IMG/VR virus record: IMGVR_UViG_3300042305_001773
Coordinates: 124,001 to 188,000 of that record
Reading direction: 5' to 3' (one strand)
Length of the DNA: 64,000 nucleotides
The first letter of the stretch is position 1. Each line of letters begins with the position of its first letter. The notes below the pieces were generated by a model. The model was not told where the DNA came from, searched no databases, and saw only the letters and a program-made list of their open reading frames with translations. Positions 1-47,542 of this stretch are shown piece by piece. The position numbers and the translations under genes were made by a program.

Positions 1-6
1 GTTGCC

Positions 7-1167
7 TTAATAAATAACGGTCAATGAAACGGCGCAATCGGTGAGCGGGAACAAATACACACCGCGCGCAGAGAATTGCCTTGGGCGCTCCAACCGCATA
101 ACAACGCGACCAGAGTGCAAAAGTGTCGCTACAACATAGGGCCCGGTTGACGAAACCGAAGCGTCGAGCGAGATAACATAATCTGTACCGGGAACAGGCA
201 CCTGCACAGACGCTCCGTGCGGGCCGGAGGCGCCAGTGATTCCCAGCCTAGCGGCTTCTTTGCCGCCGTCAATAACGCGCTCAAGTGACGCCACATCTTC
301 GCGCGGCACAAATGCCCAGTGTACGGGCTTTGTAAACTCTCCAAGATACCCAGCACGCTCAATCTGTTTGCGCTGCTCTTCGCTGATGATTGCCGCAATC
401 TCAAGATGCCGCGCGGCGATGTTTACGTACGCCAACAGCGCCGGCGAAATAGACGCGTAGTCTTCAGCCGTGTTGGTGCCGGTTATTACCGGCGACGAGC
501 GCGGCCGAACAGGAAAGAACTCGCCAGTCTCCAAAAAGACAAAATGTGTGTTGGTGCCGTTGTCGAACGAGATGCCACGATACGCCGGGCCTAGCTCGCC
601 ACTGGGCAGCTTGTCACGAAAGTTGACAAGGCTAGCCGACAACGCAGATGCCATTGTGTCGGTGAACTGGGCCGGAGCGAACACCCGAGACAGCATGCGC
701 TCGTTGTAAATCTCAGGCGCAACCGGGTGCACAATTAGCGGATTTTTTGGAGACTCCGCGACCTCTGCGATTACGGCATCAAAGATATCTTGAGCCGGCA
801 CGTCCGCATCAGCTAGCCCGTTCTCGATCAGATCGGCGAACAGAACGAGCGCCGCGCTAACAATTGCCGGCGCCGTTTGATCCGTGGCGCCGTATTGTTT
901 TGCGACTGTGATACCGCGCGAAAGCGCCGCCTGCGTAATTGAAAAAGGTACTGCGCCCCAGTTGATGTTGCCCGAAACTTGAGCAAGCTGCCAAAGCGCT
1001 TTAAAGAACGCCGGATCTTTCTTCGGCGTGCAGGACTGGCGAAACAATTCGAGCGTGCAGGCCAGTAGCCGCAACTGCCCAAGGTCGTCAGTTGTGCGAA
1101 ATTTACTTAGAAACTCCCGAACATGAACTGATGGTTTTGGTGATTTGTCCACTGAATACTCCGTCAC
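7..1167 (-). CDS. hypothetical protein (386 aa)
   Basis: Long ORF continuing the minus-strand operon; no motif recognised. Confidence 0.6.
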   Translation of the reverse strand: MTEYSVDKSPKPSVHVREFLSKFRTTDDLGQLRLLACTLELFRQSCTPKKDPAFFKALWQLAQVSGNINWGAVPFSITQAALSRGITVAKQYGATDQTAPAIVSAALVLFADLIENGLADADVPAQDIFDAVIAEVAESPKNPLIVHPVAPEIYNERMLSRVFAPAQFTDTMASALSASLVNFRDKLPSGELGPAYRGISFDNGTNTHFVFLETGEFFPVRPRSSPVITGTNTAEDYASISPALLAYVNIAARHLEIAAIISEEQRKQIERAGYLGEFTKPVHWAFVPREDVASLERVIDGGKEAARLGITGASGPHGASVQVPVPGTDYVISLDASVSSTGPYVVATLLHSGRVVMRLERPRQFSARGVYLFPLTDCAVSLTVIY

Positions 1168-2320
1168 AAGCGTTTAAAAGTGTCATCACGTTCGCTTTAA
1201 AAGTGCCTAAAATGTTGTGCGCTGTGCCGTTATGGCTATCCACATATGACGCAAAAGAAGGTTGAACGTGACTGTCGATAAGGACAGCGTGAAAATTCGG
1301 GGCGCGCTCGCTGTCGGAAAGCGCGCACCGAGCCTGAAGAAACAACTGCAGGCCGCGCATAGCGTCGCCGATAAACAACACTACGCCACATTGTGTCTGA
1401 CATAGCTGACGTACCTGCTCCGCAAACACGAGAAAGTCTACGTACGTCGCAGCACCAAACGCGGCGCCGATCTCTGCTCCCGGACCATCAGGATAGATGT
1501 GCCCAGCCATCTCGCCCAACTCGACGTGCACGGTGGCGGGAACACCCAGCGTGTAAGCAGAGTGCAGCAAGCTGCGCTCCGTTGTCGCCCGCGGAGAATA
1601 CGCCCAGCGCCCGACAGCCTCGCCGTAACCAAGACCCTGATTGGCGGCTAGCCGCGCAACGTAGTTCAAGTCGTGCGTCATGCCGCGCTCTGCCAAGCGT
1701 ACATCGGCCACCAGCCCAGCGCCGGTGGTGGCAACAGCCGTGACATACTTCTTGCGCAGCAGCTCAACTGCGGCGATACCCGCGCCAGAATGAATCGCCG
1801 GCGCCGAAATAAATAACATTACCGGCTGGTCTTCAACGCGAGCTGTGTGAATCAGGCTTGCGGCGTTGACGTGAACTTCTTTGATTAAACACAGCGCATC
1901 GGCAATCTCTGGTGGCATGGCGTCACACGGCGGTGTCGCCGCTCGAAGGGTGTCGAAAACAGGGAACGCGCTGTTTAAGCGTTGAGGTAATACAAGCGCG
2001 CCGGGATGTTCAGTGGTCGGCGTGCGCAGCATCGGTCCGCTGCCCCACAACAGCCAGTCAGCATTGACGTGCGTGTGGCTAAGAATTTGCGCCAGCAGTT
2101 GCGCAGACACCGCGTACTGCCGCTTGAATACTTTGCCAAGATGCGTTGATTCTAGTTCGATGGCGCGCGCAAACGCCGGCACATTGTTATTAAAAAGAGT
2201 CGCGCACAGATACTCCAACCTCTGCAGCCATGGCTGGTCCGCGTGCGCGATCTTGCGCCTGCGCAATTCGCGCCTCTGCCGCTGCCGATCGCTCAGGTGA
2301 CTGCGTTTTGGTCTTGGCAT
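1103..2320 (-). CDS. XRE/CI-like HTH fused to a deoxyhypusine-synthase-like domain
   Basis: N-term FARAIELESTHLGKV...VNADWLLWGSGPM resembles a phage repressor HTH. C-term VTAVATTGAG...GLGYGEAVGR...SLLHSAYTLGVPATVHV...DFLVFA resembles the bacterial DHS-like family. Confidence 0.6.
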   Translation of the reverse strand: MPRPKRSHLSDRQRQRRELRRRKIAHADQPWLQRLEYLCATLFNNNVPAFARAIELESTHLGKVFKRQYAVSAQLLAQILSHTHVNADWLLWGSGPMLRTPTTEHPGALVLPQRLNSAFPVFDTLRAATPPCDAMPPEIADALCLIKEVHVNAASLIHTARVEDQPVMLFISAPAIHSGAGIAAVELLRKKYVTAVATTGAGLVADVRLAERGMTHDLNYVARLAANQGLGYGEAVGRWAYSPRATTERSLLHSAYTLGVPATVHVELGEMAGHIYPDGPGAEIGAAFGAATYVDFLVFAEQVRQLCQTQCGVVLFIGDAMRGLQLFLQARCALSDSERAPNFHAVLIDSHVQPSFASYVDSHNGTAHNILGTFKANVMTLLNACDGVFSGQITKTISSCSGVSK

Positions 2321-3311
2321 CGTCGCCCTTTCGTTTCTGCGAGTCTACAAGTCCGCGACCTACAGCGCGCAGAATACCGGTTCCGGCCAGTAGTCGCATA
2401 CCGTGTACGGCACGCAAGTAAGCAGCGACAAGCTCATCGTAACCGTCCAGCAGCGGCATTGGATATTTGTTGAACTCGCCGAACAGATAGAAAAACTCTG
2501 TATCAGGCTGCTCGTAACACTCGGCGACTTTGAGTGACTTGATATACGTTACTCGGCTCCCGCGAACACGAACACACGGCAGCTTTGTTTTTGGGGCGTG
2601 TAAAAAAAACTGCCGGGCCTCGATCAGCCAGCCATTGTCCTGTGGAACAACAGCCAACCGCCACATCGAGCCCATCGTTTTACGCCCGAGCTGCTTTGTC
2701 TGCTTGTTGTATGCGTTGCGCTCGCGCTGCAGCTCGCCCCACACTAAGCGCTCGTACTGCTTTACCACGTCCAGCCCACAGCCAACGCGCGGGTCCCATT
2801 CCGGCGCGGCGATAAATCGAGTGGCAACGCGGCAAGTGACAATAAGCTTAGTGTCTTTATTGTGACGTCCCAGCGCCCGTAATTTGTTTTTAACGTCACG
2901 ATACTGCGCCGTACTGATACGCGCGTAGCAAAACGGACAGATGTGTGCCCAGTTACACGGCCGCAACGCCACATCTTTTTTCCAACGAAAAAACATATAC
3001 GTCGGACGGCAGAACAGACACCGCTGAAACGACAGCCGAAACTTTTTGAAATCAAAATCAGCGTCGTCAGGATGTGCCAGCCGCGCCACTGGTAACCACA
3101 GCGCGCGAATTGCTAACTCTTTCAGTTTGAGAGCCCAGCGCTGCCGCACCGTATTTGTCCGGCTGATTACGGCGTCGTGTGTCTTGGCGCTAGTCAAGCC
3201 CAGTACAAAGTGCTGCGCAAACACATGCGCCATACGGACGCTGACGCGATTAACGCGCCACGGTTTTAATCGGTAGCGACGGACAAACTCCGCAAAGGCG
3301 ATAAGCGCCAT
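2190..3311 (-). CDS. Zn-finger protein resembling a degenerate rolling-circle Rep (Rep_1-like)
   Basis: CLFC...CNWAHICPFCYAR zinc motif and C-term AVHGMRLLAGTGILR recall Rep_1; no HxH motif seen. Confidence 0.4.
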   Translation of the reverse strand: MALIAFAEFVRRYRLKPWRVNRVSVRMAHVFAQHFVLGLTSAKTHDAVISRTNTVRQRWALKLKELAIRALWLPVARLAHPDDADFDFKKFRLSFQRCLFCRPTYMFFRWKKDVALRPCNWAHICPFCYARISTAQYRDVKNKLRALGRHNKDTKLIVTCRVATRFIAAPEWDPRVGCGLDVVKQYERLVWGELQRERNAYNKQTKQLGRKTMGSMWRLAVVPQDNGWLIEARQFFLHAPKTKLPCVRVRGSRVTYIKSLKVAECYEQPDTEFFYLFGEFNKYPMPLLDGYDELVAAYLRAVHGMRLLAGTGILRAVGRGLVDSQKRKGDDAKTKTQSPERSAAAEARIAQAQDRARGPAMAAEVGVSVRDSF

Positions 3312-3514
3312 TACAGCGTGTCTTTCACCGGTAATGTGTCCATATCCAGAATTGCGTTGCGCACATTAACGTGCTGAGCAATTTCTGCGCGCTGCGTTCG
3401 GATCTCTGTGCGTAAAGACTCAATGTGCGCCGCGGCTTCTAACGCCAGCTGCGCGCCGTCTGCGCGTGGTTGTTTAGCCGCCCACAACGTCAAACGTTTT
3501 ACAATGTCGCGCAT
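3311..3514 (-). CDS. small phage protein (DIVxRL...EAAxxIExLR family)
   Basis: Common small phage-protein motif; coupled to neighbours. Confidence 0.6.
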   Translation of the reverse strand: MRDIVKRLTLWAAKQPRADGAQLALEAAAHIESLRTEIRTQRAEIAQHVNVRNAILDMDTLPVKDTL

Positions 3515-3765
3515 TTTGTCACCAGCGCGCCGCTAGAGTAGTCACCGCCGGGCGTCACAGTCTTTGTGCTTAACACCTGCACCTTCGGCTTTGGCGGAAT
3601 ACGACCAAACCAAATACCGCAGCCGAACAAGCAGAGCCGCATGGCCGGCGCGGTAGATAAGCCGATATGCAAAATACAGCCAGTACCCATCCATTCAAAT
3701 CTAGCGCCCCATCGGCGCGTCGTATCGAAGTGCGTTGTTGTAACAGTCCATGCGTTTGCAGTCAT
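3499..3765 (-). CDS. hypothetical protein
   Basis: ORF fills the operon slot. Confidence 0.45.
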   Translation of the reverse strand: MTANAWTVTTTHFDTTRRWGARFEWMGTGCILHIGLSTAPAMRLCLFGCGIWFGRIPPKPKVQVLSTKTVTPGGDYSSGALVTKCATL

Positions 3766-3768
3766 TGC

Positions 3769-3939
3769 TTATACTTTTTTACGTTTTCGTGAAGGTTTGG
3801 CGGCTGCGTACATCTGATCGATCAGGTCGTGCACCATTGGATCGCAATCGACGTGGCGATACGGTACGTACCGCGTTTCTTTTAAGAACTTGCGCACAAG
3901 CGTTTTTAAACTTTTCAGCTCTTCTTTTGCGCTAATCAT
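3769..3939 (-). CDS. small basic protein (56 aa, MISAKEELKSLK...RKRKKV)
   Basis: Translated by hand; ATGA overlap with the upstream stop; below the ORF-track cutoff. Confidence 0.55.
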   Translation of the reverse strand: MISAKEELKSLKTLVRKFLKETRYVPYRHVDCDPMVHDLIDQMYAAAKPSRKRKKV

Positions 3940-4250
3940 TCGTGTTTTTCCCGCAAGCGGTCTAACGTTTTGGCTAAGTTCATAATGTTTTCAACAGCCT
4001 CTGCGTTAGATAGTTCACCGGCGTGCATCCGAAGACTAATCGCGCCGTGCATGGTCGCGCGCAACTCCTCGTCGGTGAGGGTCTGGGTTCTTGCGAAATC
4101 CGTCAGGTTTTGGATCGCCACACGCAGCGAATCCGTTTCCCTCTCCATACACGCCAGCCGGCCACGCAGTCGCTCAATCTCGGTCCGTTGATCCTGAATG
4201 ATCTGGTCGGCCTGCTCCCACGACATAATCGCAGCATTCGGGTCAAGCAT
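3936..4250 (-). CDS. hypothetical coiled-coil protein
   Basis: EIERLR and LTDEE motifs common in small phage proteins. Confidence 0.6.
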   Translation of the reverse strand: MLDPNAAIMSWEQADQIIQDQRTEIERLRGRLACMERETDSLRVAIQNLTDFARTQTLTDEELRATMHGAISLRMHAGELSNAEAVENIMNLAKTLDRLREKHE

Positions 4251-4253
4251 CGT

Positions 4254-4343
4254 TCACCTGTCGTATCCGCGAAAGTAAAAATAGATAAACGCGATGGCTA
4301 TAGCCGCGCCGCAAATCTCAGATACCCAACTGCACACGATCAC
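4254..4343 (-). CDS. putative 29-aa membrane peptide (MIVCSWVSEICGAAIAIAFIYFYFRGYDR)
   Basis: GTGA overlap with the MazG-like stop; fills the gap exactly; hydrophobic. Confidence 0.4.
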   Translation of the reverse strand: MIVCSWVSEICGAAIAIAFIYFYFRGYDR

Positions 4344-4648
4344 GACGCCTCCTTCACAAATATTCCTTCGGGCGTTAATGTGCCCTTGCGGTCTTTGATC
4401 TCGTCGTAGGCGCTGGCTAAACAGTCCGTAATATTTGCGCCGTACAACTTGCAGTACAAGATCAGCGTGACCAGTACGTCGCCGACGCCGTCTTTCACGC
4501 CGGGCATATCACCCTTGAGCGTCGCGTCGGCCAGTTCGCCCAGTTCCGACATTGTCTTCATCAGCTGCGCGGTTGGGTTGCTGTTGGGGATGATCTTTCG
4601 GTCCATCGCCCACTGCACCACCTTCGTTTCCAGTTCGTGAAACGTCAT
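4340..4648 (-). CDS. MazG-like NTP pyrophosphohydrolase
   Basis: QLMKTMSELGELADA...DGVGDVLVTLI...AYDEIKDRKG, the typical phage MazG-like signature. Confidence 0.9.
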   Translation of the reverse strand: MTFHELETKVVQWAMDRKIIPNSNPTAQLMKTMSELGELADATLKGDMPGVKDGVGDVLVTLILYCKLYGANITDCLASAYDEIKDRKGTLTPEGIFVKEAS

Positions 4649-4673
4649 GTCAGTCGTTGCCTCCGGTGCGGGT

Positions 4674-5120
4674 TTATTTTTGTAAAATAGATTTCAATAA
4701 GTCTGCTGCTATTTTTGTTTCTTTGATTCCCACTCTGTCATAAGAATCTGAGTCATCAATAAAATATTGTATTGCTTGTTTTTGTTCCTCATTTAACAAT
4801 GCGCCAATTCTTGTGTCTGCGTCATTGCCTTTTAACTCCCTGATTTCTTTCGTTAAGGTTTCGACCTGCGCCTCAAGCTGTTTGATGCGCTTTCTAAATC
4901 GAACTTCAGTTGGGTCGTCGTGCAGGCCCCAATCCTGTTCGTGAACTGATAACAAATCGAGCGCGTACAGCCGCAGCTGCTTGCGCATGTCTTCGCGCTC
5001 TTGGCGCAACATGTTAAGCAGCGCAAGAACAGTCCGCATTTCTTGCGGAGTCAGCTCGCCCATCGCCAACCGTATGGCCTGCCTGTCGCCGGCCCAGATA
5101 GCTTCAAGGTTGATTGGCAT
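4674..5120 (-). CDS. hypothetical protein
   Basis: ORF; AT-rich 3' part; coiled coil. Confidence 0.6.
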   Translation of the reverse strand: MPINLEAIWAGDRQAIRLAMGELTPQEMRTVLALLNMLRQEREDMRKQLRLYALDLLSVHEQDWGLHDDPTEVRFRKRIKQLEAQVETLTKEIRELKGNDADTRIGALLNEEQKQAIQYFIDDSDSYDRVGIKETKIAADLLKSILQK

Positions 5121-5123
5121 GAC

Positions 5124-5363
5124 TCACCACGTTGGCGTCCACGTTGGCGTCCACGGACCAGACGGCCAACCCGGCGTGTCTTGCTTTTGCGGGTGCGGAT
5201 ATGGATATGACAGCGGCAAACGCGTAACCGCAAGCTCGACGGCAGTCAGCCGCTGCTGCAGTGTTTCAATCTGCGCTCTCAGCTGCGCTATCTCCGCCGC
5301 TAGTTGAAGCATCGGCGACGGCTTGCGGATTTTCTTCTTTGTTTTCTTGGCTTTCTTCGCCAC
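5124..5363 (-). CDS. small basic coiled-coil protein ending in WTPTWTPTW
   Basis: GTG start after CAGGAG RBS. Confidence 0.5.
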   Translation of the reverse strand: MAKKAKKTKKKIRKPSPMLQLAAEIAQLRAQIETLQQRLTAVELAVTRLPLSYPYPHPQKQDTPGWPSGPWTPTWTPTW

Positions 5364-5799
5364 TGATCTGCTCCTGCATCTTGTCAATTCGAGCACGCAC
5401 TAACTCTATGGCTTGCTCGACACTTTCAACTTCAATAAACGGAAGCTTGGTTTGTAAGTGTTCCCACTTCGTCGGACCTACGCCGGCTACGTTGATCTCG
5501 CCGGGCTCTTGGCTGCCAAATTCGTCAAGCAGCGCCACGGCGGTTGCAGTCTCTCGCGACGGAAACACCAGAATCCTGTTGTCAACGTCGGAGAAGAACT
5601 TCACACCCGTCCGATCACAAATGACATAGCGCACGGCTGACTCGCCCGTATCAATGTAGCTCATCGCCTTAGCCGGCGCAGAATAACTCACGCGATTTTG
5701 CGGTGCGTCAGGGCTGTGGCACGCTTTAAACTTTTTGCCGCTGTTACAGGGACACCGGTCGTTACGTTTGATAATGCTATCTTTGCGAATCGTGCTCAC
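5266..5799 (-). CDS. SEC-C metal-binding motif protein
   Basis: RNDRCPCNSGKKFKACH is a SEC-C motif at the N-terminus. Confidence 0.8.
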   Translation of the reverse strand: MSTIRKDSIIKRNDRCPCNSGKKFKACHSPDAPQNRVSYSAPAKAMSYIDTGESAVRYVICDRTGVKFFSDVDNRILVFPSRETATAVALLDEFGSQEPGEINVAGVGPTKWEHLQTKLPFIEVESVEQAIELVRARIDKMQEQISGEESQENKEENPQAVADASTSGGDSAAESAD

Positions 5800-6085
5800 G
5801 AAAAACCTCCGTGTTGCCGTTGAGCTGGATTAACCTCCGGCCAGCCGGACCGGGTTGGGCCATTGTCTCTTTTTCTCTTGCTTGTGCAATACGTAGCCAG
5901 TTCAACCGAAACTCTTCAATCGTGACCCCTTCCCGCGGCAGCAGTAGGTCGAGCGACATGCGCGTTTGGCGGGCGCTGACGTCGTAATTCATTGCAACGC
6001 CAATAACCTGAGCATTAAACAACAGCGCAATACCTTCCTGCAGCTGTTCTAGCGGGTCGGGGTTCGATTCAAACGGCGCCCTCAT
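5777..6085 (-). CDS. hypothetical protein
   Basis: Start MRAPFES overlaps the upstream stop (ATGA). Confidence 0.55.
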   Translation of the reverse strand: MRAPFESNPDPLEQLQEGIALLFNAQVIGVAMNYDVSARQTRMSLDLLLPREGVTIEEFRLNWLRIAQAREKETMAQPGPAGRRLIQLNGNTEVFREHDSQR

Positions 6086-6348
6086 GGTTCGACCGTCACC
6101 TGCGCCGTTGTCATGAGCAAGCCGGCACGCATGGTCGAGACGCCGTGAATGGTGATGCGGTCGCCCACAACAATCGTCTCGCGGCACTGGACGCTGAGCC
6201 GATCAGGCGCGGTCGGGTCAGGGTAGATCAGCTTGGGCGTGCCCTCAGCAAGTACCGTCGGCAGGCTTGGCGGCGTCGGGGGCTGCTTGCGAGGAATCGT
6301 CACTACGCCGGGTGTTGTCATGGTCGAGACCTCGGTTGAAGAAGACAT
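6082..6348 (-). CDS. hypothetical Pro/Thr-rich protein
   Basis: ORF coupled to the downstream gene; start uncertain. Confidence 0.45.
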   Translation of the reverse strand: MSSSTEVSTMTTPGVVTIPRKQPPTPPSLPTVLAEGTPKLIYPDPTAPDRLSVQCRETIVVGDRITIHGVSTMRAGLLMTTAQVTVEP

Positions 6349-6484
6349 GGAAACACAGCTTACCGGGATTGCCCCGCAGGCTGACGTTCGGCGGAAACGG
6401 AGAGTCGCTAGGCGTCGGCTCGTTCGAAAACTGATGAATCGCGTGAAACGTGTTGGAGTCGTTGGACATGCTTTGCTCGCTTTG

Positions 6485-6744
6485 ACGGCAGGATTATGTT
6501 GTCATAATCCGAGATTTGCCGTTTGTAGGGGGGTAAAATGGGTCAAAAATTGCCCGTAACCTATTGGCGTTATTGGGTTTGCAACAACGCGTTCAAGCAT
6601 TTTTTGTCCGAATTACGCGGACCTAGAGTAAGTCCTTCGGACTTACAAGGCCGGCATTTTTTTGGAAATGCCGGCAACTTTGGATGTCTACTGCATGATC
6701 GGGGGGTTGTTCAATTAACGTTGGGCAAATTGGGTAATTTGCCC
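6485..6744. promoter_or_regulatory. inverted-repeat-dense intergenic region
   Basis: Hairpins at 6485-6522, 6606-6622, 6628-6646, 6650-6675 and 6723-6744. Confidence 0.55.
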
Positions 6745-6759
6745 TGACGTTTGGATAGC

Positions 6760-6815
6760 AAAAAAAGAGATAGCGTAGGGGCGGGATTTCCCCGCCCCTA
6801 CGCGTAGAATCTCTT
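6760..6815 (-). terminator. Rho-independent terminator
   Basis: 13-bp GC stem GCGTAGGGGCGGG/CCCGCCCCTACGC (6773-6803) followed on the minus strand by a T7 tract, just after the 6825 stop. Confidence 0.8.
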
Positions 6816-6824
6816 CAACTCGGC

Positions 6825-7946
6825 TCAGCGCTTCTTCTTGCGCTTCAGAATGCTGTTGCGGTCATTCTGGCGGCCGGTGCGGCGGACATTGTCTTCTGTC
6901 AGGTAGACGTCCAGATCTACACCCACAACGGTGGTGATGCTGATCGGCGGGAAGTAGCTGCTCTTGCCGTTTTCATCCCGGGCGTTGTAGTTGCCCTGCA
7001 TGTAAACCTCAATTGCAGCAAGGATTTTTACCACGCAGCCGAAGTGCTCGGCGCGCGCCTGACCTACACGCTCGTGCAGCAGCCACTCGGTGTAGCCAAT
7101 CGGATCCCGTTTGCGGCCCTTCTGCATGCCGCAGTTGCCGTCCTGCATCTTTTCAAAGAAAGACAGCGTATTTCTGGCGCCGTACTTCTTGGCTGCCAGC
7201 AGATAAGCCGTCAGCAGCGGAGACCGGAACAGCATGGTCGTGCCGCGCTTGGCGCCCGGGTTCAACCCGTCAAGCGCCGTCAGCTCTTCCTTGAACGCCG
7301 CAACGTAATCAATCGCAGTCGCGCGACTGACCGGCGCAAACGTAGCCAGCAGCTCCTGCATCTCGCGAAGCGGGCTCTGCCGGTAGCACGCCAGCATGAT
7401 CTCGTACGCGTACGACAGCGGCGTGGGCAGGCCCAGCGACTTCTGCAGCAGCGGCGAGTTCATCGGCACGCCATGATACAGCAGCGCGCCGTGGATCAGG
7501 TCCGCGGACGTGTTGACCGCATCGCGGCTGTCATAGAACAGGCAGAGCTTGCCCGCTTCTTCAGCGTTGCGCACGGGCACAACCGTAACGCACACGCGTT
7601 CGGGGATTACATCGGACAGGCCCTGCCACCAGACCTCGCCGCGGGTGTGAGCCGTGAGCTTCCACCTGTTTCCGCGCGGGTCCTCCGCCATAAACACATC
7701 TTCGTGCAGATTCGGCACGAACTTGTGGAGGTGCTTCGCCTTCGGGGCGCGCACGACCTGATCACGCGGCTGCCGCGGGTTAGCTGGCACAGCATGCCAC
7801 TGCGCTACGGACATGTAGCGCACTTCCTTCTTTTTGGTTTCAACCTTGGGCGGCTTACGCACCGCCTCAATCTTGATCTTGCGCGCAGCTCGTCGCTGCC
7901 GCTCTTCGTCGCCGGGGTTATCAGCAGCAATCGTCTTGTCTGACAT
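6825..7946 (-). CDS. ParB/Srx-like N-terminal domain protein
   Basis: VPANPRQPR...WKLTAHTRGEVW resembles the ParB-N (DG)HTR motif region. Confidence 0.45.
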   Translation of the reverse strand: MSDKTIAADNPGDEERQRRAARKIKIEAVRKPPKVETKKKEVRYMSVAQWHAVPANPRQPRDQVVRAPKAKHLHKFVPNLHEDVFMAEDPRGNRWKLTAHTRGEVWWQGLSDVIPERVCVTVVPVRNAEEAGKLCLFYDSRDAVNTSADLIHGALLYHGVPMNSPLLQKSLGLPTPLSYAYEIMLACYRQSPLREMQELLATFAPVSRATAIDYVAAFKEELTALDGLNPGAKRGTTMLFRSPLLTAYLLAAKKYGARNTLSFFEKMQDGNCGMQKGRKRDPIGYTEWLLHERVGQARAEHFGCVVKILAAIEVYMQGNYNARDENGKSSYFPPISITTVVGVDLDVYLTEDNVRRTGRQNDRNSILKRKKKR

Positions 7947-7963
7947 TTTGCTCTTTCTTTTGG

Positions 7964-8302
7964 TTAAGTTGCAGCTACTTCCGGTTCGCTGCTTGGTTCG
8001 GATTTAGCCGGAATTTCAGCTTCCGGCAGCATGTCGTACAGCCCCATTTCCATGTCAAGGATCATGGGGTTTGGCACGTCAGGACCGCCGTAGATTAGGC
8101 AGCGCACGTGCGGGTCAGCTGGCTTACCGGCAATGTGCTCGTGCAACATTGAGAACGTGATGATATAAAACCGTTCTTCCGGCAGTCGGTCGATGAGGTC
8201 CTGCGGTAGCGCGCGATTGTATTTCATCACGTCGCGCGAAATGTGATTGATGCGGTTGAGAAATTCTTTGTCTAGGTACTTGTATTTTGTGACTTCAGCC
8301 AT
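7964..8302 (-). CDS. hypothetical protein
   Basis: Likely start MAEVTKY right after the upstream stop. Confidence 0.6.
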   Translation of the reverse strand: MAEVTKYKYLDKEFLNRINHISRDVMKYNRALPQDLIDRLPEERFYIITFSMLHEHIAGKPADPHVRCLIYGGPDVPNPMILDMEMGLYDMLPEAEIPAKSEPSSEPEVAAT

Positions 8303-8309
8303 TGGATGT

Positions 8310-8564
8310 TTAGCGCTGGCGCGCTTTTTGTGCGTTGTGAAATTTGAGAACGGCATCGGCCGCCTGCTTTGATTCCGCGTCGCTATATCCTTCGAGCTTG
8401 AATCTGTTTTTGACGTAGTTATGTTCAGCTGACGACGGGTCTGGTTTGAACGTCGCCTGTTGCGGCGGTACGGTTGCCGCGCCGAAGATAGCCGCAATAA
8501 TGCCGATAACAAGCGCTACGACAAATACCGGCCATCCAAAGCCGCCGCTGTTGTTTTGATTCAT
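8310..8564 (-). CDS. single-TM membrane protein
   Basis: Hydrophobic FGWPVFVVALVIGIIAAIFGA. Confidence 0.65.
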   Translation of the reverse strand: MNQNNSGGFGWPVFVVALVIGIIAAIFGAATVPPQQATFKPDPSSAEHNYVKNRFKLEGYSDAESKQAADAVLKFHNAQKARQR

Positions 8565-8905
8565 GCGTTTGCCTTTCTGTGCGCTTTGTCTAGCGCGTCA
8601 ATTGCCTTTGTTAGCTCGGGCATCCGTTCATCCTCTTCAAACATTCCGTCGCCTTTTGTGTTGGCTTCGTACACAGTTTCGTCGCCGCAGTCGGGGTAGT
8701 CGGCGCGGAAGTAGCCGTGACGCAAACGCAAGTAGCCCGCTTGTTTGCCGTTATCGTCTAGCACGTCGTACTGTTCTGGGCATGCGACAGATGTTTGTTT
8801 AAGTGTGTAACCGCCGATGCAAAGATCGGGCTCGTCCCAGTTGGGGTCATTCTGCGCCATTTGGGGGCTCCATGCCGCTAGTGATGATGTTGGGAAATTG
8901 CTCAC
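8561..8905 (-). CDS. conserved phage hypothetical protein
   Basis: ACPEQYDV...GYLRLRHG motif seen in phage proteins. Confidence 0.65.
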   Translation of the reverse strand: MSNFPTSSLAAWSPQMAQNDPNWDEPDLCIGGYTLKQTSVACPEQYDVLDDNGKQAGYLRLRHGYFRADYPDCGDETVYEANTKGDGMFEEDERMPELTKAIDALDKAHRKANA

Positions 8906-9110
8906 GAAATTGCTTTTTGGTCCAGAAGATATCTTTATGCCCTTCGGCGGCCAGTTCCATTTCGCACTCCATAGGGTAGTGCCGAAGGACGCTCAATGCC
9001 CGCTGGCGAATTGCTTTCGGGACCTTTGGTGTTTTTTTTGGATCTAATAGGTCGCGCATAAACTCGCGGGCGTATTGTACGGCTCTAAAGCGCTCGTCGG
9101 GCATTGTCAT
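8847..9110 (-). CDS. BPSL0761-like protein
   Basis: MTMPDERFRAV...TPKVPKAIR...LRHYP. Confidence 0.65.
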   Translation of the reverse strand: MTMPDERFRAVQYAREFMRDLLDPKKTPKVPKAIRQRALSVLRHYPMECEMELAAEGHKDIFWTKKQFREQFPNIITSGMEPPNGAE

Positions 9111-30883: not shown

Positions 30884-30956
30884 AGCCGGCGGTCGGATTC
30901 GAACCGACGACAGGCAGTTTACAAAACTGCTACTCTACCAACTGAGTTACGCCGGC
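30884..30956 (-). tRNA. tRNA-Thr(UGU), CCA not encoded
   Basis: GCCGGCGTAACTCAGTTGGTAGAGTAGCAGTT-T-TGT-AAACTGCCTGTCGTCGGTTCGAATCCGACCGCCGGCT folds as a cloverleaf. Confidence 0.95.

Positions 30957-41785: not shown

Positions 41786-47542
<5,757 letters not shown>

What the first reader, a model, noticed from the sequence alone, without database searches (positions are those of the whole stretch)
1103..2320. Repressor-type HTH fused to an apparently degenerate deoxyhypusine-synthase-like domain
Seen: a CI/XRE-like HTH ending in NADWLLWGSGPM, then a domain whose motifs follow the bacterial DHS-like NAD-binding family in order (TAVAxxGAG, GLGYGEAVGR, SLLxxAYxLGVPATVHV, HxxP..GAxxGAA.YxDF, GVxLxIG). 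The segment between the GAG and GLGYGE motifs looks shortened and conserved His/Asp/Ser residues look substituted. Inference: an enzyme fold re-used as a ligand sensor (NAD+ or polyamine) controlling phage transcription. NAD+ depletion is a common anti-phage output, so such a sensor would matter.
Basis: partly seen in the sequence, partly recalled or inferred. Interest (0 to 1): 0.7.

Follow-up and report, generated by a model that had tools for sequence, protein, structure and literature searches.

The report
Jumbo-phage HTH fused to dead enzyme fold
A conserved gene of an uncultured ~200-kb phage lineage encodes a repressor-type DNA-binding head fused to a deoxyhypusine-synthase-fold domain that has lost most conserved enzyme residues; it is always paired with a replication-initiator-like gene, and what it senses or controls is unknown.

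Summary
Window 1103..2320 (-) is a real 405-aa gene with at least 93 family clusters. It has a basic arm (aa 1-33), an XRE/CI-type HTH (aa 34-97) and a DHS/LOR-SDH-fold domain (aa 112-392; Z 17.8-19.6).

The nearest family is not DHS itself but the bacterial GSU2086 family (NF052581; hhalign E 1.8e-45). That family sits in, or is fused to, ADP-heptose/LPS-core genes.

Compared with GSU2086, the phage clade:
- is monophyletic on a long stem;
- lacks a ~19-aa segment;
- has lost 13 near-invariant polar residues and all three motifs that align with the DS family's conserved Gly-rich motifs;
- has no conserved lysine, so no DHS catalytic Lys;
- keeps a strongly conserved central block (aa 218-300).

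The fused domain therefore looks like a constrained pseudoenzyme.

The gene always follows a Rep_1-like zinc-ribbon gene whose stop overlaps its start. Both sit at the head of the phage's replication/recombination block.

My preferred reading is an oligomeric DNA-binding regulator or adaptor of that module. This is a new variant of a known kind, of moderate interest.

The parts
1103..2320 (-). Whole gene: 405-aa HTH + GSU2086-like (DHS-fold) fusion protein; the stop codon is 1103-1105.
   Evidence: ORF list. Homologues. The same protein is found in its own genome at G000:C1:125106-126320.
2326..2330 (-). Shine-Dalgarno-like AAGGG, 5 nt upstream of the ATG at 2320.
   Evidence: Read directly from the sequence. 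It supports the long (405-aa) start over the 371-aa call of the collection's own entry (P0001).
2222..2320 (-). N-terminal basic arm (aa 1-33, MPRPKRSHLSDRQRQRRELRRRK...). It overlaps the 3' end of the upstream gene by 131 nt.
   Evidence: Where the arm is present in homologues it has a net charge of +3 to +14, at low sequence identity. tblastn matches in distant loci start at residues 1-5. AF2 predicts a helix at 11-27 with modest pLDDT.
2030..2221 (-). XRE/CI-type five-helix HTH domain (aa 34-97), ending in the WLLxGxGPM motif.
   Evidence: Helices at 30-43, 47-53, 58-65, 73-82 and 87-92. Profile matches to 4ich, 186 CI and 434 repressor. hhalign to an HTH_3 unit of P0148. W89, L90, G93 and G95 are invariant.
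1988..2029 (-). Flexible linker (aa 98-111).
   Evidence: pLDDT is below 50 at residues 102-106. Mean pairwise identity is 15%.
1145..1987 (-). GSU2086-like domain with the DHS/LOR-SDH fold (aa 112-392), catalytically degenerate.
   Evidence: hhalign against 42 bacterial GSU2086-like proteins: prob 100, E 1.8e-45, aa 112-405. NF052581 E 3e-29. Structural Z 17.8-19.6. Conserved polar residues lost.
1421..1669 (-). Most conserved block of the protein (aa 218-300: DLNYVARLAA.QG.GYGEA.GRW ... S ... P.TVH.E.GE...H..P...GAE.GAA.GAA.Y.D.L).
   Evidence: Mean pairwise identity is 42%, against 35% for the HTH and 25-28% for the Rossmann halves. D206, E234, S250, H274 and D295 are shared with the bacterial family.
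1679..1684 (-). Junction (G213/M214) where the phage family lacks the ~19-aa G.TSEDV...G.FGM..ET segment of the bacterial relatives.
   Evidence: hhalign alignment.
2190..3311 (-). Upstream partner gene, always adjacent: a 373-aa Cys4 zinc-ribbon protein with a Rep_1-like (rolling-circle initiator) fold and no HUH histidines.
   Evidence: Synteny in all 27 viral loci and in the most divergent members. Atlas feature score 0.96 and structural TM 0.51-0.58 to Rep_1 clusters. Invariant C101, C119, C125, C128; Y283 near-invariant. No Pfam hit.
7..1167 (-). Downstream partner gene: a 386-aa protein with no recognisable family or fold, overlapping the fusion gene's 3' end.
   Evidence: Syntenic in all 27 viral loci. 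No Pfam, PHROG or Atlas match. The AF2 model has pLDDT 85.6 but no fold match.
6470..6803 (-). Likely start of the operon that contains the gene: a strong terminator (6803-6773), then a ~300-nt non-coding region with four hairpins or palindromes.
   Evidence: Terminator with a 14-bp stem. The non-coding region is 78-88% identical between phages whose adjacent coding DNA is 67-79% identical. No Rfam match.

Best explanation
The protein is a non-enzymatic, sequence-specific DNA-binding protein and a core gene of an uncultured ~200-kb jumbo-phage lineage.

Shown:
- A basic N-terminal arm plus an XRE/CI-type HTH is fused, through a flexible linker, to a domain homologous to the bacterial GSU2086 family (DHS/LOR-SDH fold).
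- That domain arose once, on a long stem branch. It lost a ~19-aa segment, 13 near-invariant polar residues and the three motifs that align with the DS family's conserved Gly-rich motifs. It remains under strong constraint in its central block.
- The gene always directly follows a Rep_1-like zinc-ribbon gene, with overlapping stop and start. It lies at the head of the SbcCD / helicase / DnaB / primase block.

Inferred:
- The pseudoenzyme domain acts as the oligomerisation module, as DHS-fold proteins are oligomers, and possibly as an effector-binding module. It would present two or more HTH heads to repeated or palindromic DNA sites.
- The protein thereby regulates transcription of the replication/recombination module, probably together with the Rep-like partner.
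- Any ligand is more likely to be related to the sugar-nucleotide chemistry of the bacterial parent family than to spermidine.
For: Architecture and homology.

Degeneracy. H174, K177, H205, E208, D271, N316, S319, E325, K329, R335, N336, D349 and R358 of the bacterial family are not conserved. No lysine is conserved at 50% or more anywhere in aa 108-405.

Continued constraint: the central block has 42% mean pairwise identity, higher than the HTH.

Single origin on a long stem: the phage clade has 100/100 support and a stem of 1.13 substitutions per site, and groups with bacterial GSU2086-like proteins to the exclusion of DS at 100/100.

DNA binding: the HTH matches, the invariant WLLxG motif, and an arm that is basic wherever it is present.

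Partnership and module: synteny in 27 of 27 viral loci and in the most divergent members, with overlapping stops and starts. The upstream protein is Rep_1-like. SbcD, SbcC, helicases and primase lie downstream. A terminator and a conserved non-coding region lie upstream.
Against: - No operator was found. There is no recurrent palindrome in the genome, and GGCAAAT occurs 29 times against 21.6 expected.
- Oligomerisation and ligand binding could not be tested; the complex job was not folded.
- The gene sits mid-operon with no divergent promoter, which is atypical for a classical repressor.
- The retained residues D206, E234, S250, H265, H274 and D295 could still form a catalytic or binding site.
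- The Rep_1 assignment of the partner rests on language-model features and TM scores of about 0.5-0.58, with no sequence-profile hit. The partner also lacks HUH histidines.
Confidence: 0.4

Rival explanations
1. Targeting or origin-recognition subunit. The HTH fusion is not a transcription factor. It recruits or positions the Rep_1-like partner (and perhaps the downstream protein) at a specific DNA site for replication initiation or DNA processing. The DHS-fold domain is the protein-protein interface.
For: - Strict adjacency to the Rep-like gene, with overlapping stop and start, even in members about 30% identical.
- Position at the head of the replication/recombination genes.
- The Rep-like partner lacks HUH histidines and so may need partners.
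Against: - The Rep_1 assignment is only a lead.
- XRE-type HTH domains are overwhelmingly transcription regulators (general knowledge).
- No origin-like iterons were seen near the genes.
- No interaction test could be run.
Confidence: 0.22
2. One reading: a repressor whose degenerate DHS-like domain senses NAD+ (or ADP-ribose, or spermidine) and couples phage transcription to NAD+ depletion by host defence systems.
For: - The fold class binds NAD in DHS and AgrE (PDB titles 1dhs and 6lrg).
- The window's own protein keeps a TTGAG stretch that aligns with the TGA motif of DS, and an aligned Asp (D206).
- The central block is conserved.
Against: - The three motifs aligned with the DS family's conserved Gly-rich motifs are not conserved across the phage family. 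G200 is 40% and H205 is replaced. The counterpart of the DS GGG.PkN motif (GSAV..PE in GSU2086) is lost.
- The Rossmann halves are the least conserved structured parts, at 25-28%.
- The parent family is tied to heptose genes, not to polyamines or NAD metabolism.
- The genome has no NAPRTase-type NAD salvage gene.
- No DS SWGK motif or spermidine-type Lys chemistry is present.
Confidence: 0.1
3. Bifunctional enzyme-regulator, in the manner of BirA or NadR. The C-terminal domain is still an enzyme with a reduced or altered active site built from D206, E234, S250, H265, H274, D295 and Y293. The HTH autoregulates according to substrate occupancy.
For: Several polar residues shared with the bacterial family are kept at 85-100%. 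The block around them is the most conserved region.
Against: - About half of the bacterial near-invariant polar set and a whole conserved segment are gone.
- All conserved basic residues (K177, K329, R335, R358) are lost.
- The stem branch is long.
- The phage has no pathway context: no SIS, PfkB-adjacent or cytidylyltransferase genes.
Confidence: 0.1
4. Pure scaffold. The DHS-fold domain binds nothing and serves only as a dimerisation or tetramerisation domain for a constitutive DNA-binding (for example nucleoid-organising or silencing) protein.
For: The motifs aligned with DS Gly-rich motifs are lost. Conserved positions are dominated by Gly/Ala structural residues.
Against: The conserved polar residues (E234, S250, H274, Y293, D295, C385) are hard to explain by packing alone.
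Confidence: 0.15

Closest known systems
GSU2086 family (NCBIfam NF052581): uncharacterised ~320-aa bacterial proteins
   Same: Homologous over aa 112-405 (hhalign prob 100, E 1.8e-45). All 29 phage family members tested hit the model. Both share the G.GYGEA.G, S..L..A...P.TVH, G...H, GAA.G...D and GGV motifs. The two groups cluster together to the exclusion of DS in the tree.
   Different: - The phage protein scores 102 bits against a curated cut-off of 250.
- It lacks the TSEDV...FGM..ET segment and 13 near-invariant polar residues.
- It carries an N-terminal HTH.
- The bacterial members sit next to GT9 heptosyltransferase, PfkB kinase, SIS/GmhA-like and DUF3108 genes, or are fused to SIS or cytidylyltransferase-like domains. 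The phage genes never do.
Deoxyhypusine synthase (Pfam PF01916 DS)
   Same: Same fold (Z 17.8, about 230 aligned residues). Remote homology (hhalign prob 94.6, E 7e-8 over aa 151-322). Aligned TGA...D motif.
   Different: Below the Pfam threshold (15.2 vs 27 bits). No counterpart of the SWGK catalytic-Lys motif and no conserved Lys at all. The GGG.PkN motif is not kept. About 11-13% identity.
LOR/SDH-type C-terminal domain of ArgZ/AgrE (PF21570) and the 3c2q protein
   Same: Best structural matches (Z 18.4-19.6). Five family members hit PF21570 weakly. The bacterial GSU2086 profile hits AgrE at E 8e-7 through the shared G..vI.tG...HD.E motif.
   Different: In the phage family the HD.E motif is reduced to the Asp alone. 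No arginine dihydrolase domain is present. There is no evidence of ornithine or NAD chemistry.
XRE/CI-type phage repressors (434 repressor, 186 CI; PF01381, PF07022)
   Same: Five-helix HTH with the WLLxG tail. The basic N-terminal arm recalls the arm of lambda CI (own knowledge).
   Different: - The window's own protein reaches no Pfam HTH model.
- The C-terminal domain is neither an S24 peptidase nor a CI-type dimerisation domain.
- No divergent cro-like gene or lysogeny module was seen in the surrounding genes; the gene lies in a replication block.
One-component regulators built on re-used enzyme folds (RpiR HTH+SIS, NrtR Nudix+wHTH, NadR) - a functional analogy only, from own knowledge
   Same: The same logic: a DNA-binding head fused to an enzyme-derived domain that reports a metabolite.
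   Different: Different folds. To my knowledge no DHS-fold effector domain has been described in a regulator, and two literature searches found none. Ligand binding is not shown here.

Membership tests
Deoxyhypusine synthase (PF01916 / TIGR00321) | Score above the curated family threshold | tested here: not met
   PF01916 scores 15.2 bits against a cut-off of 27, and only over aa 153-207. TIGR00321 E 0.11.
Deoxyhypusine synthase (PF01916 / TIGR00321) | Catalytic lysine in the C-terminal SWGK motif | tested here: not met
   27 true DS proteins conserve GgLSg.T..Ea.SWGK. The phage family has no Lys conserved at 50% or more anywhere in aa 108-405. The hhalign match to DS stops at aa 322.
Deoxyhypusine synthase (PF01916 / TIGR00321) | The three Gly-rich motifs conserved in DS (laGa..ag; sTGA...hD..e; gGGvPkN). 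That these are the dinucleotide-binding loops is my own recollection of DHS structures. | tested here: not met
   The aligned positions are variable in 100 phage family members; only the Asp (D206) is kept at 85%.
Deoxyhypusine synthase (PF01916 / TIGR00321) | DHS-like alpha/beta fold | tested here: met
   Z 17.8, rmsd 3.3 A, 224-232 aligned residues against 7cmc, 6dft and 1dhs.
GSU2086 family (NF052581) | Score above the curated threshold (250 bits) | tested here: not met
   102.5 bits, E 3.1e-29. The best of 29 members has E 5.6e-31.
GSU2086 family (NF052581) | Homology over the whole domain | tested here: met
   hhalign prob 100, E 1.8e-45, 288 columns. The two groups cluster together in the tree at 100/100.
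GSU2086 family (NF052581) | Near-invariant polar set (H174, K177, H205, D206, E208, TSEDV segment, E234, S250, H265, D271, H274, D295, N316, S319, E325, K329, R335, N336, D349, R358; window numbering) | tested here: not met
   Only D206, E234, S250, H274 and D295 are kept, with H265 at 61%. Thirteen residues are lost and the TSEDV segment is deleted.
GSU2086 family (NF052581) | Genomic association with heptose / LPS-core genes | tested here: not met
   Bacterial loci carry GT9, PfkB, SIS_2 and DUF3108 neighbours. The phage genome has no SIS_2 or CTP_transf_like gene, and the phage neighbours are a Rep-like gene and an unknown gene.
XRE/CI-type HTH (PF01381 / PF07022) | Sequence-profile match to the HTH | tested here: inconclusive
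   The window protein itself has no Pfam HTH hit. One family member hits HTH_3 at 1.8e-5 and two hit Phage_CI_repr at 0.03. The family profile hits 4ich at 7e-4, tandem HTH_3 proteins at 1e-22 to 1e-29, and gives hhalign prob 84.
XRE/CI-type HTH (PF01381 / PF07022) | Five-helix bundle with helix-turn-helix | tested here: met
   AF2 places helices at 30-43, 47-53, 58-65, 73-82 and 87-92, with pLDDT 87-92.
XRE/CI-type HTH (PF01381 / PF07022) | Sequence-specific operator binding | not testable with these tools
   No recurrent palindrome was found. This needs EMSA or DAP-seq.
Ligand-sensing one-component regulator | Small-molecule binding by the C-terminal domain that changes DNA binding | not testable with these tools
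   The complex job with NAD was not folded and is not evidence either way.

The most novel reading that the evidence does not exclude
The pseudoenzyme domain still binds the substrate or product class of its bacterial parent: a nucleotide-activated or phosphorylated heptose of the LPS-core pathway, or a related dinucleotide. A jumbo phage would then read the host's envelope-precursor or nucleotide state through a dead enzyme and gate its replication/recombination module accordingly, together with a Rep-like partner. A corollary is that the bacterial GSU2086 family is an unrecognised enzyme of ADP-heptose biosynthesis.
Probability: 0.12. Interest if true: 0.75.

Novelty: new variant of a known kind. 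Interest (0 to 1): 0.45.

Why it matters
This would be a previously undescribed regulator architecture: an XRE-type HTH on a DHS-fold pseudoenzyme. It is fixed as a core gene, paired with a Rep-like gene, in a whole lineage of uncultured ~200-kb phages. That makes it a handle on how these phages control, or target, their replication module.

It is also a clean natural example of an enzyme fold converted to a non-catalytic role.

As a by-product, it draws attention to the bacterial GSU2086 family. That family is widespread (at least 593 species hits) and embedded in ADP-heptose/LPS-core gene clusters, yet has no assigned function.

If the domain does sense a metabolite, it would link phage replication control to host metabolic state. 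Nothing here shows that yet.

Tried and rejected
- Complex prediction with two copies of aa 108-405 plus NAD was returned 'NOT FOLDED'.
- tblastn of the protein against 50,697 phage records found no match. The terminase is at most 31% identical to any isolate, so no cultured relative is available.
- phmmer against PDB sequences found nothing.
- Operator search:
  - Direct and inverted repeats in 1-9000 gave only chance-level pairs.
  - Genome-wide gapped palindromes showed no recurrent arm.
  - GGCAAAT half-sites occur 29 times against 21.6 expected.
  - The sigma-70 scan was below the shuffle expectation.
- Pfam scans of 18 upstream and 19 downstream orthologues found no family.
- The downstream protein folds confidently but matches no known fold.
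- Rfam on 1-9000 found nothing.
- The first genome-contig scan with the 42-sequence alignment failed for lack of a conserved stretch. It was repeated with 16 closer sequences.
- Rejected: membership in DS (fails the threshold, the catalytic Lys and the Gly-rich motifs).
- Rejected: a classical lysogeny repressor. No divergent partner or lysogeny genes were seen nearby, and the setting is a replication module.
- The AgrE structural paper was not in the library, so NAD-contact residues of AgrE could not be mapped.
Full report

The minus-strand ORF 1103..2320 (405 aa, ATG) is present. An AAGGG Shine-Dalgarno sequence lies five bases upstream of the ATG. The window is bases 124001-188000 of a 205,044-bp IMG/VR virus record. 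That record encodes a large terminase, a collagen-like tail fibre and a baseplate wedge protein. The terminase is at most 31% identical to that of any isolate, so this is an uncultured jumbo phage.

The protein has 56 homologues in the 5.8-billion-protein collection, nearly all from contigs of about 200 kb. It also has 27 loci in IMG/VR. A profile of 29 members finds 93 cluster representatives at E <= 1e-30 among 1.84 billion proteins.

**2. The N-terminus**

AF2 (pLDDT 83.4) gives a helix at 11-27 followed by five helices at 30-92.

- The family profile aligns to the HTH of the solved regulator 4ich (E 7e-4). It also aligns to the 186 CI and 434 repressors, through the shared WLLxG tail.
- One member reaches Pfam HTH_3 at 1.8e-5.
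- The profile picks up proteins built of 5-7 tandem HTH_3 units at E 1e-22 to 1e-29.
- hhalign to one such unit gives prob 84, E 7e-6.
- The window's own protein reaches no Pfam HTH model, so this is a divergent XRE/CI-type HTH.
- Residues 1-33 are poorly conserved in sequence, but wherever the arm is present it is basic, with net charge +3 to +14.
- tblastn matches in distant loci begin at residues 1-5.

I therefore take the ATG at 2320 as the start. This means a 131-nt overlap with the upstream gene.

**3. The C-terminus**

- Pfam DS is hit only weakly (15.2 bits against a cut-off of 27; aa 153-207).
- NCBIfam NF052581 'GSU2086 family protein' is hit at E 3e-29, and by all 29 members tested.
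- hhalign of the phage family against 42 bacterial ~320-aa GSU2086-like proteins gives prob 100, E 1.8e-45 over aa 112-405. The apparent 'linker' 112-147 therefore belongs to the domain.
- Structurally, residues 142-392 superpose on ArgZ/AgrE C-terminal domains (Z 19.3-19.6), LOR/SDH 3c2q (Z 18.4) and DHS from four organisms (Z about 17.8).
- I fetched 27 bona fide DS genes. hhalign gives prob 97.5 (E 8.7e-12) for the bacterial GSU2086-like family against DS. It gives prob 94.6 (E 7e-8) for the phage family against DS.
- A tree of 31 phage, 28 bacterial and 10 DS rows was built. These were random samples of 100, 43 and 27 sequences; the rest were left out.
  - The phage clade is one group (100/100) on a long stem of 1.13 substitutions per site.
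  - It joins the bacterial GSU2086-like proteins to the exclusion of DS (100/100).

**4. Degenerate?**

Yes, relative to its nearest relatives.

- The phage family lacks a ~19-residue segment (G.TSEDV...G.FGM..ET) that is nearly invariant in the bacterial proteins.
- Of the bacterial near-invariant polar residues, H174, K177, H205, E208, D271, N316, S319, E325, K329, R335, N336, D349 and R358 (window numbering) are not conserved in 100 phage members. D206, E234, S250, H274 and D295 are kept, with H265 at 61%.
- The HD.E motif is shared by GSU2086, AgrE/ArgZ, 3c2q and bacterial DS, so it is ancestral. In the phage family it is reduced to the Asp.
- The three motifs that align with the DS family's conserved Gly-rich motifs are variable.
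- No lysine is conserved anywhere in aa 108-405. DS-type chemistry through the SWGK lysine is therefore excluded.
- The domain is not decaying. Its central block (aa 218-300) is the most conserved part of the whole protein, at 42% mean pairwise identity. The HTH is at 35% and the Rossmann halves at 25-28%.

This is the signature of a constrained pseudoenzyme.

**5. What the parent family is**

- Relatives occur in at least 593 species.
- In 47 loci the recurrent same-strand neighbours are DUF3108 (16 loci), GT9 heptosyltransferase (12), PfkB kinase (11), a CTP_transf_1 cytidylyltransferase (9) and a SIS_2 protein (7).
- Fusions to SIS or cytidylyltransferase-like domains exist (top AFDB hit).

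The parent is therefore tied to ADP-heptose/LPS-core biosynthesis, not to polyamines. Its function is unknown. That it is a missing enzyme of that pathway is my inference.

**6. Context in the phage**

- In all 27 viral loci the order is [about 355-373-aa protein] -> [fusion] -> [about 370-390-aa protein].
- The most divergent members keep this order, with 4-14-nt stop/start overlaps. hhalign confirms the upstream homology (prob 100). The downstream homology is confirmed only weakly (prob 37).
- The upstream protein has an invariant Cys4 zinc ribbon and a near-invariant Tyr283 but no HUH histidines.
  - The ESM Atlas places it with Rep_1 (PF01446) rolling-circle initiators, by features (0.96, 187-193 shared features) and by structure (TM 0.51-0.58).
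  - No Pfam model is reached, so this remains a lead.
- The downstream protein folds confidently (pLDDT 85.6) but matches nothing.
- Further downstream on the same strand lie SbcD, SbcC, a DNA helicase, a DnaB-like helicase and a primase. MazG lies upstream.
- A strong terminator (6803-6773) is followed by a 300-nt non-coding region. That region is better conserved (78-88%) than the adjacent coding DNA (67-79%). This probably marks the start of the operon.

**7. Mechanism**

Shown: the architecture, the homology, the degeneracy with continued constraint, the single origin, the obligatory pairing with the Rep-like gene, and the location in the replication module.

Inferred: the protein binds DNA specifically through the arm and HTH. 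The DHS-fold pseudoenzyme supplies oligomerisation and perhaps effector binding. The protein regulates, or helps target, the replication/recombination module together with the Rep-like partner.

My estimates are:
- regulator: 0.4
- Rep-targeting subunit: 0.22
- pure scaffold: 0.15
- still-active enzyme: 0.1

Against a canonical NAD site:
- The motifs aligned with the DS Gly-rich motifs are lost.
- The parent family is heptose-linked.
- The genome has no NAPRTase-type NAD salvage gene.

The only docking job was not folded and says nothing.

**8. Comparison with known families, and novelty**

It works like a one-component regulator built on a re-used enzyme fold (RpiR, NrtR and NadR are analogies from my own knowledge). 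It is not a member of DS: it fails the threshold, the catalytic Lys and the Gly-rich motifs. It is only an outlying, sub-threshold branch of NF052581.

Two literature searches found no description of an HTH-DHS-like fusion. A survey of viral polyamine enzymes reported no DHS-like SpeY homologues in phages (PMC9992855).

I rate it a new variant of a known kind, with interest 0.45. The domain architecture is robust, conserved and undescribed, and its pairing with a Rep-like gene is intriguing. Its function is still unknown.

Noticed in passing
window 2190-3311 (-): The upstream gene encodes a 373-aa protein with an invariant Cys4 zinc ribbon (C101, C119, C125, C128) and a near-invariant Tyr283. 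The ESM Atlas groups it with Rep_1 (PF01446) rolling-circle initiators by features and by structure. It lacks HUH histidines (it has GW.IE.RQ.F instead) and reaches no Pfam model. Its 3' tail overlaps the fusion gene by 131 nt.
   Followed up: partly
window 7-1167 (-): The downstream 386-aa gene is syntenic in all 27 viral loci. It folds with pLDDT 85.6 (helical N-half, beta-rich C-half) but has no family or fold match in Pfam, PHROGs, Atlas, PDB or AFDB, so it may be a new fold combination.
   Followed up: partly
loci L032-L111 (bacterial genomes); proteins P0141, P0161, P0194, P0196: The bacterial GSU2086 family (NF052581) is found in at least 593 species. It recurrently sits beside GT9 heptosyltransferase, PfkB kinase, SIS/GmhA-like and DUF3108 genes, and is sometimes fused to SIS or cytidylyltransferase-like domains. 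It is a candidate unassigned enzyme of ADP-heptose/LPS-core biosynthesis.
   Followed up: partly
window 6470-6803 (-): A strong intrinsic terminator (14-bp stem, 6803-6773) is followed by a ~300-nt non-coding region with four hairpins or palindromes (GGGCAAATT-ACCC-AATTTGCCC, GCCGGCATTT...AAATGCCGGC, GTAAGTCC-GAA-GGACTTAC, GGATTATG-ACAA-CATAATCC). This region is more conserved between phages (78-88%) than the adjacent coding DNA (67-79%). There is no Rfam match. It could be a regulatory region or an ncRNA.
   Followed up: partly
proteins P0148, P0152, P0163, P0181, P0192: Proteins of 484-667 aa made of 5-7 tandem XRE-type HTH_3 units match the N-terminal domain profile. This is an unusual poly-HTH architecture of unknown origin and role.
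   Followed up: no
protein P0135 (679 aa): This protein appears to carry two GSU2086/DHS-like domains in tandem: ArgZ-like_C_2nd at residues 58-115 and DS at 409-456.
   Followed up: no
G000:C1:110892-123440 (locus L112), just outside the window: The replication/recombination block on the same strand holds SbcD-like and SbcC-like proteins, a DNA helicase, a DnaB-like helicase and a primase. It also has three unannotated genes (524, 206 and 313 aa).
   Followed up: partly
window 4340-4648 (-) and 5266-5799 (-): A MazG-like pyrophosphatase (phrog_1992, E 2e-35) lies in the same operon. So does a 177-aa protein with a SEC-C-like CPCNSGKKFKACH motif (recognised by eye) that is syntenic in most loci but has no PHROG hit.
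   Followed up: no
window 6825-7946 (-) vs locus L004 1381-2502: Mosaicism. The 373-aa phrog_2615 protein is 100% identical in L004, while its neighbours there are only 70-87% identical. In L005 the positional counterpart is only 26% identical. This indicates recent exchange of that gene.
   Followed up: no
window 41786-46390 (-) and 30884-30956 (-): A 1534-aa tail-fibre protein with collagen-like repeats in its C-terminal third (many PHROG tail-fibre hits), and a tRNA-Thr (TGT).
   Followed up: no
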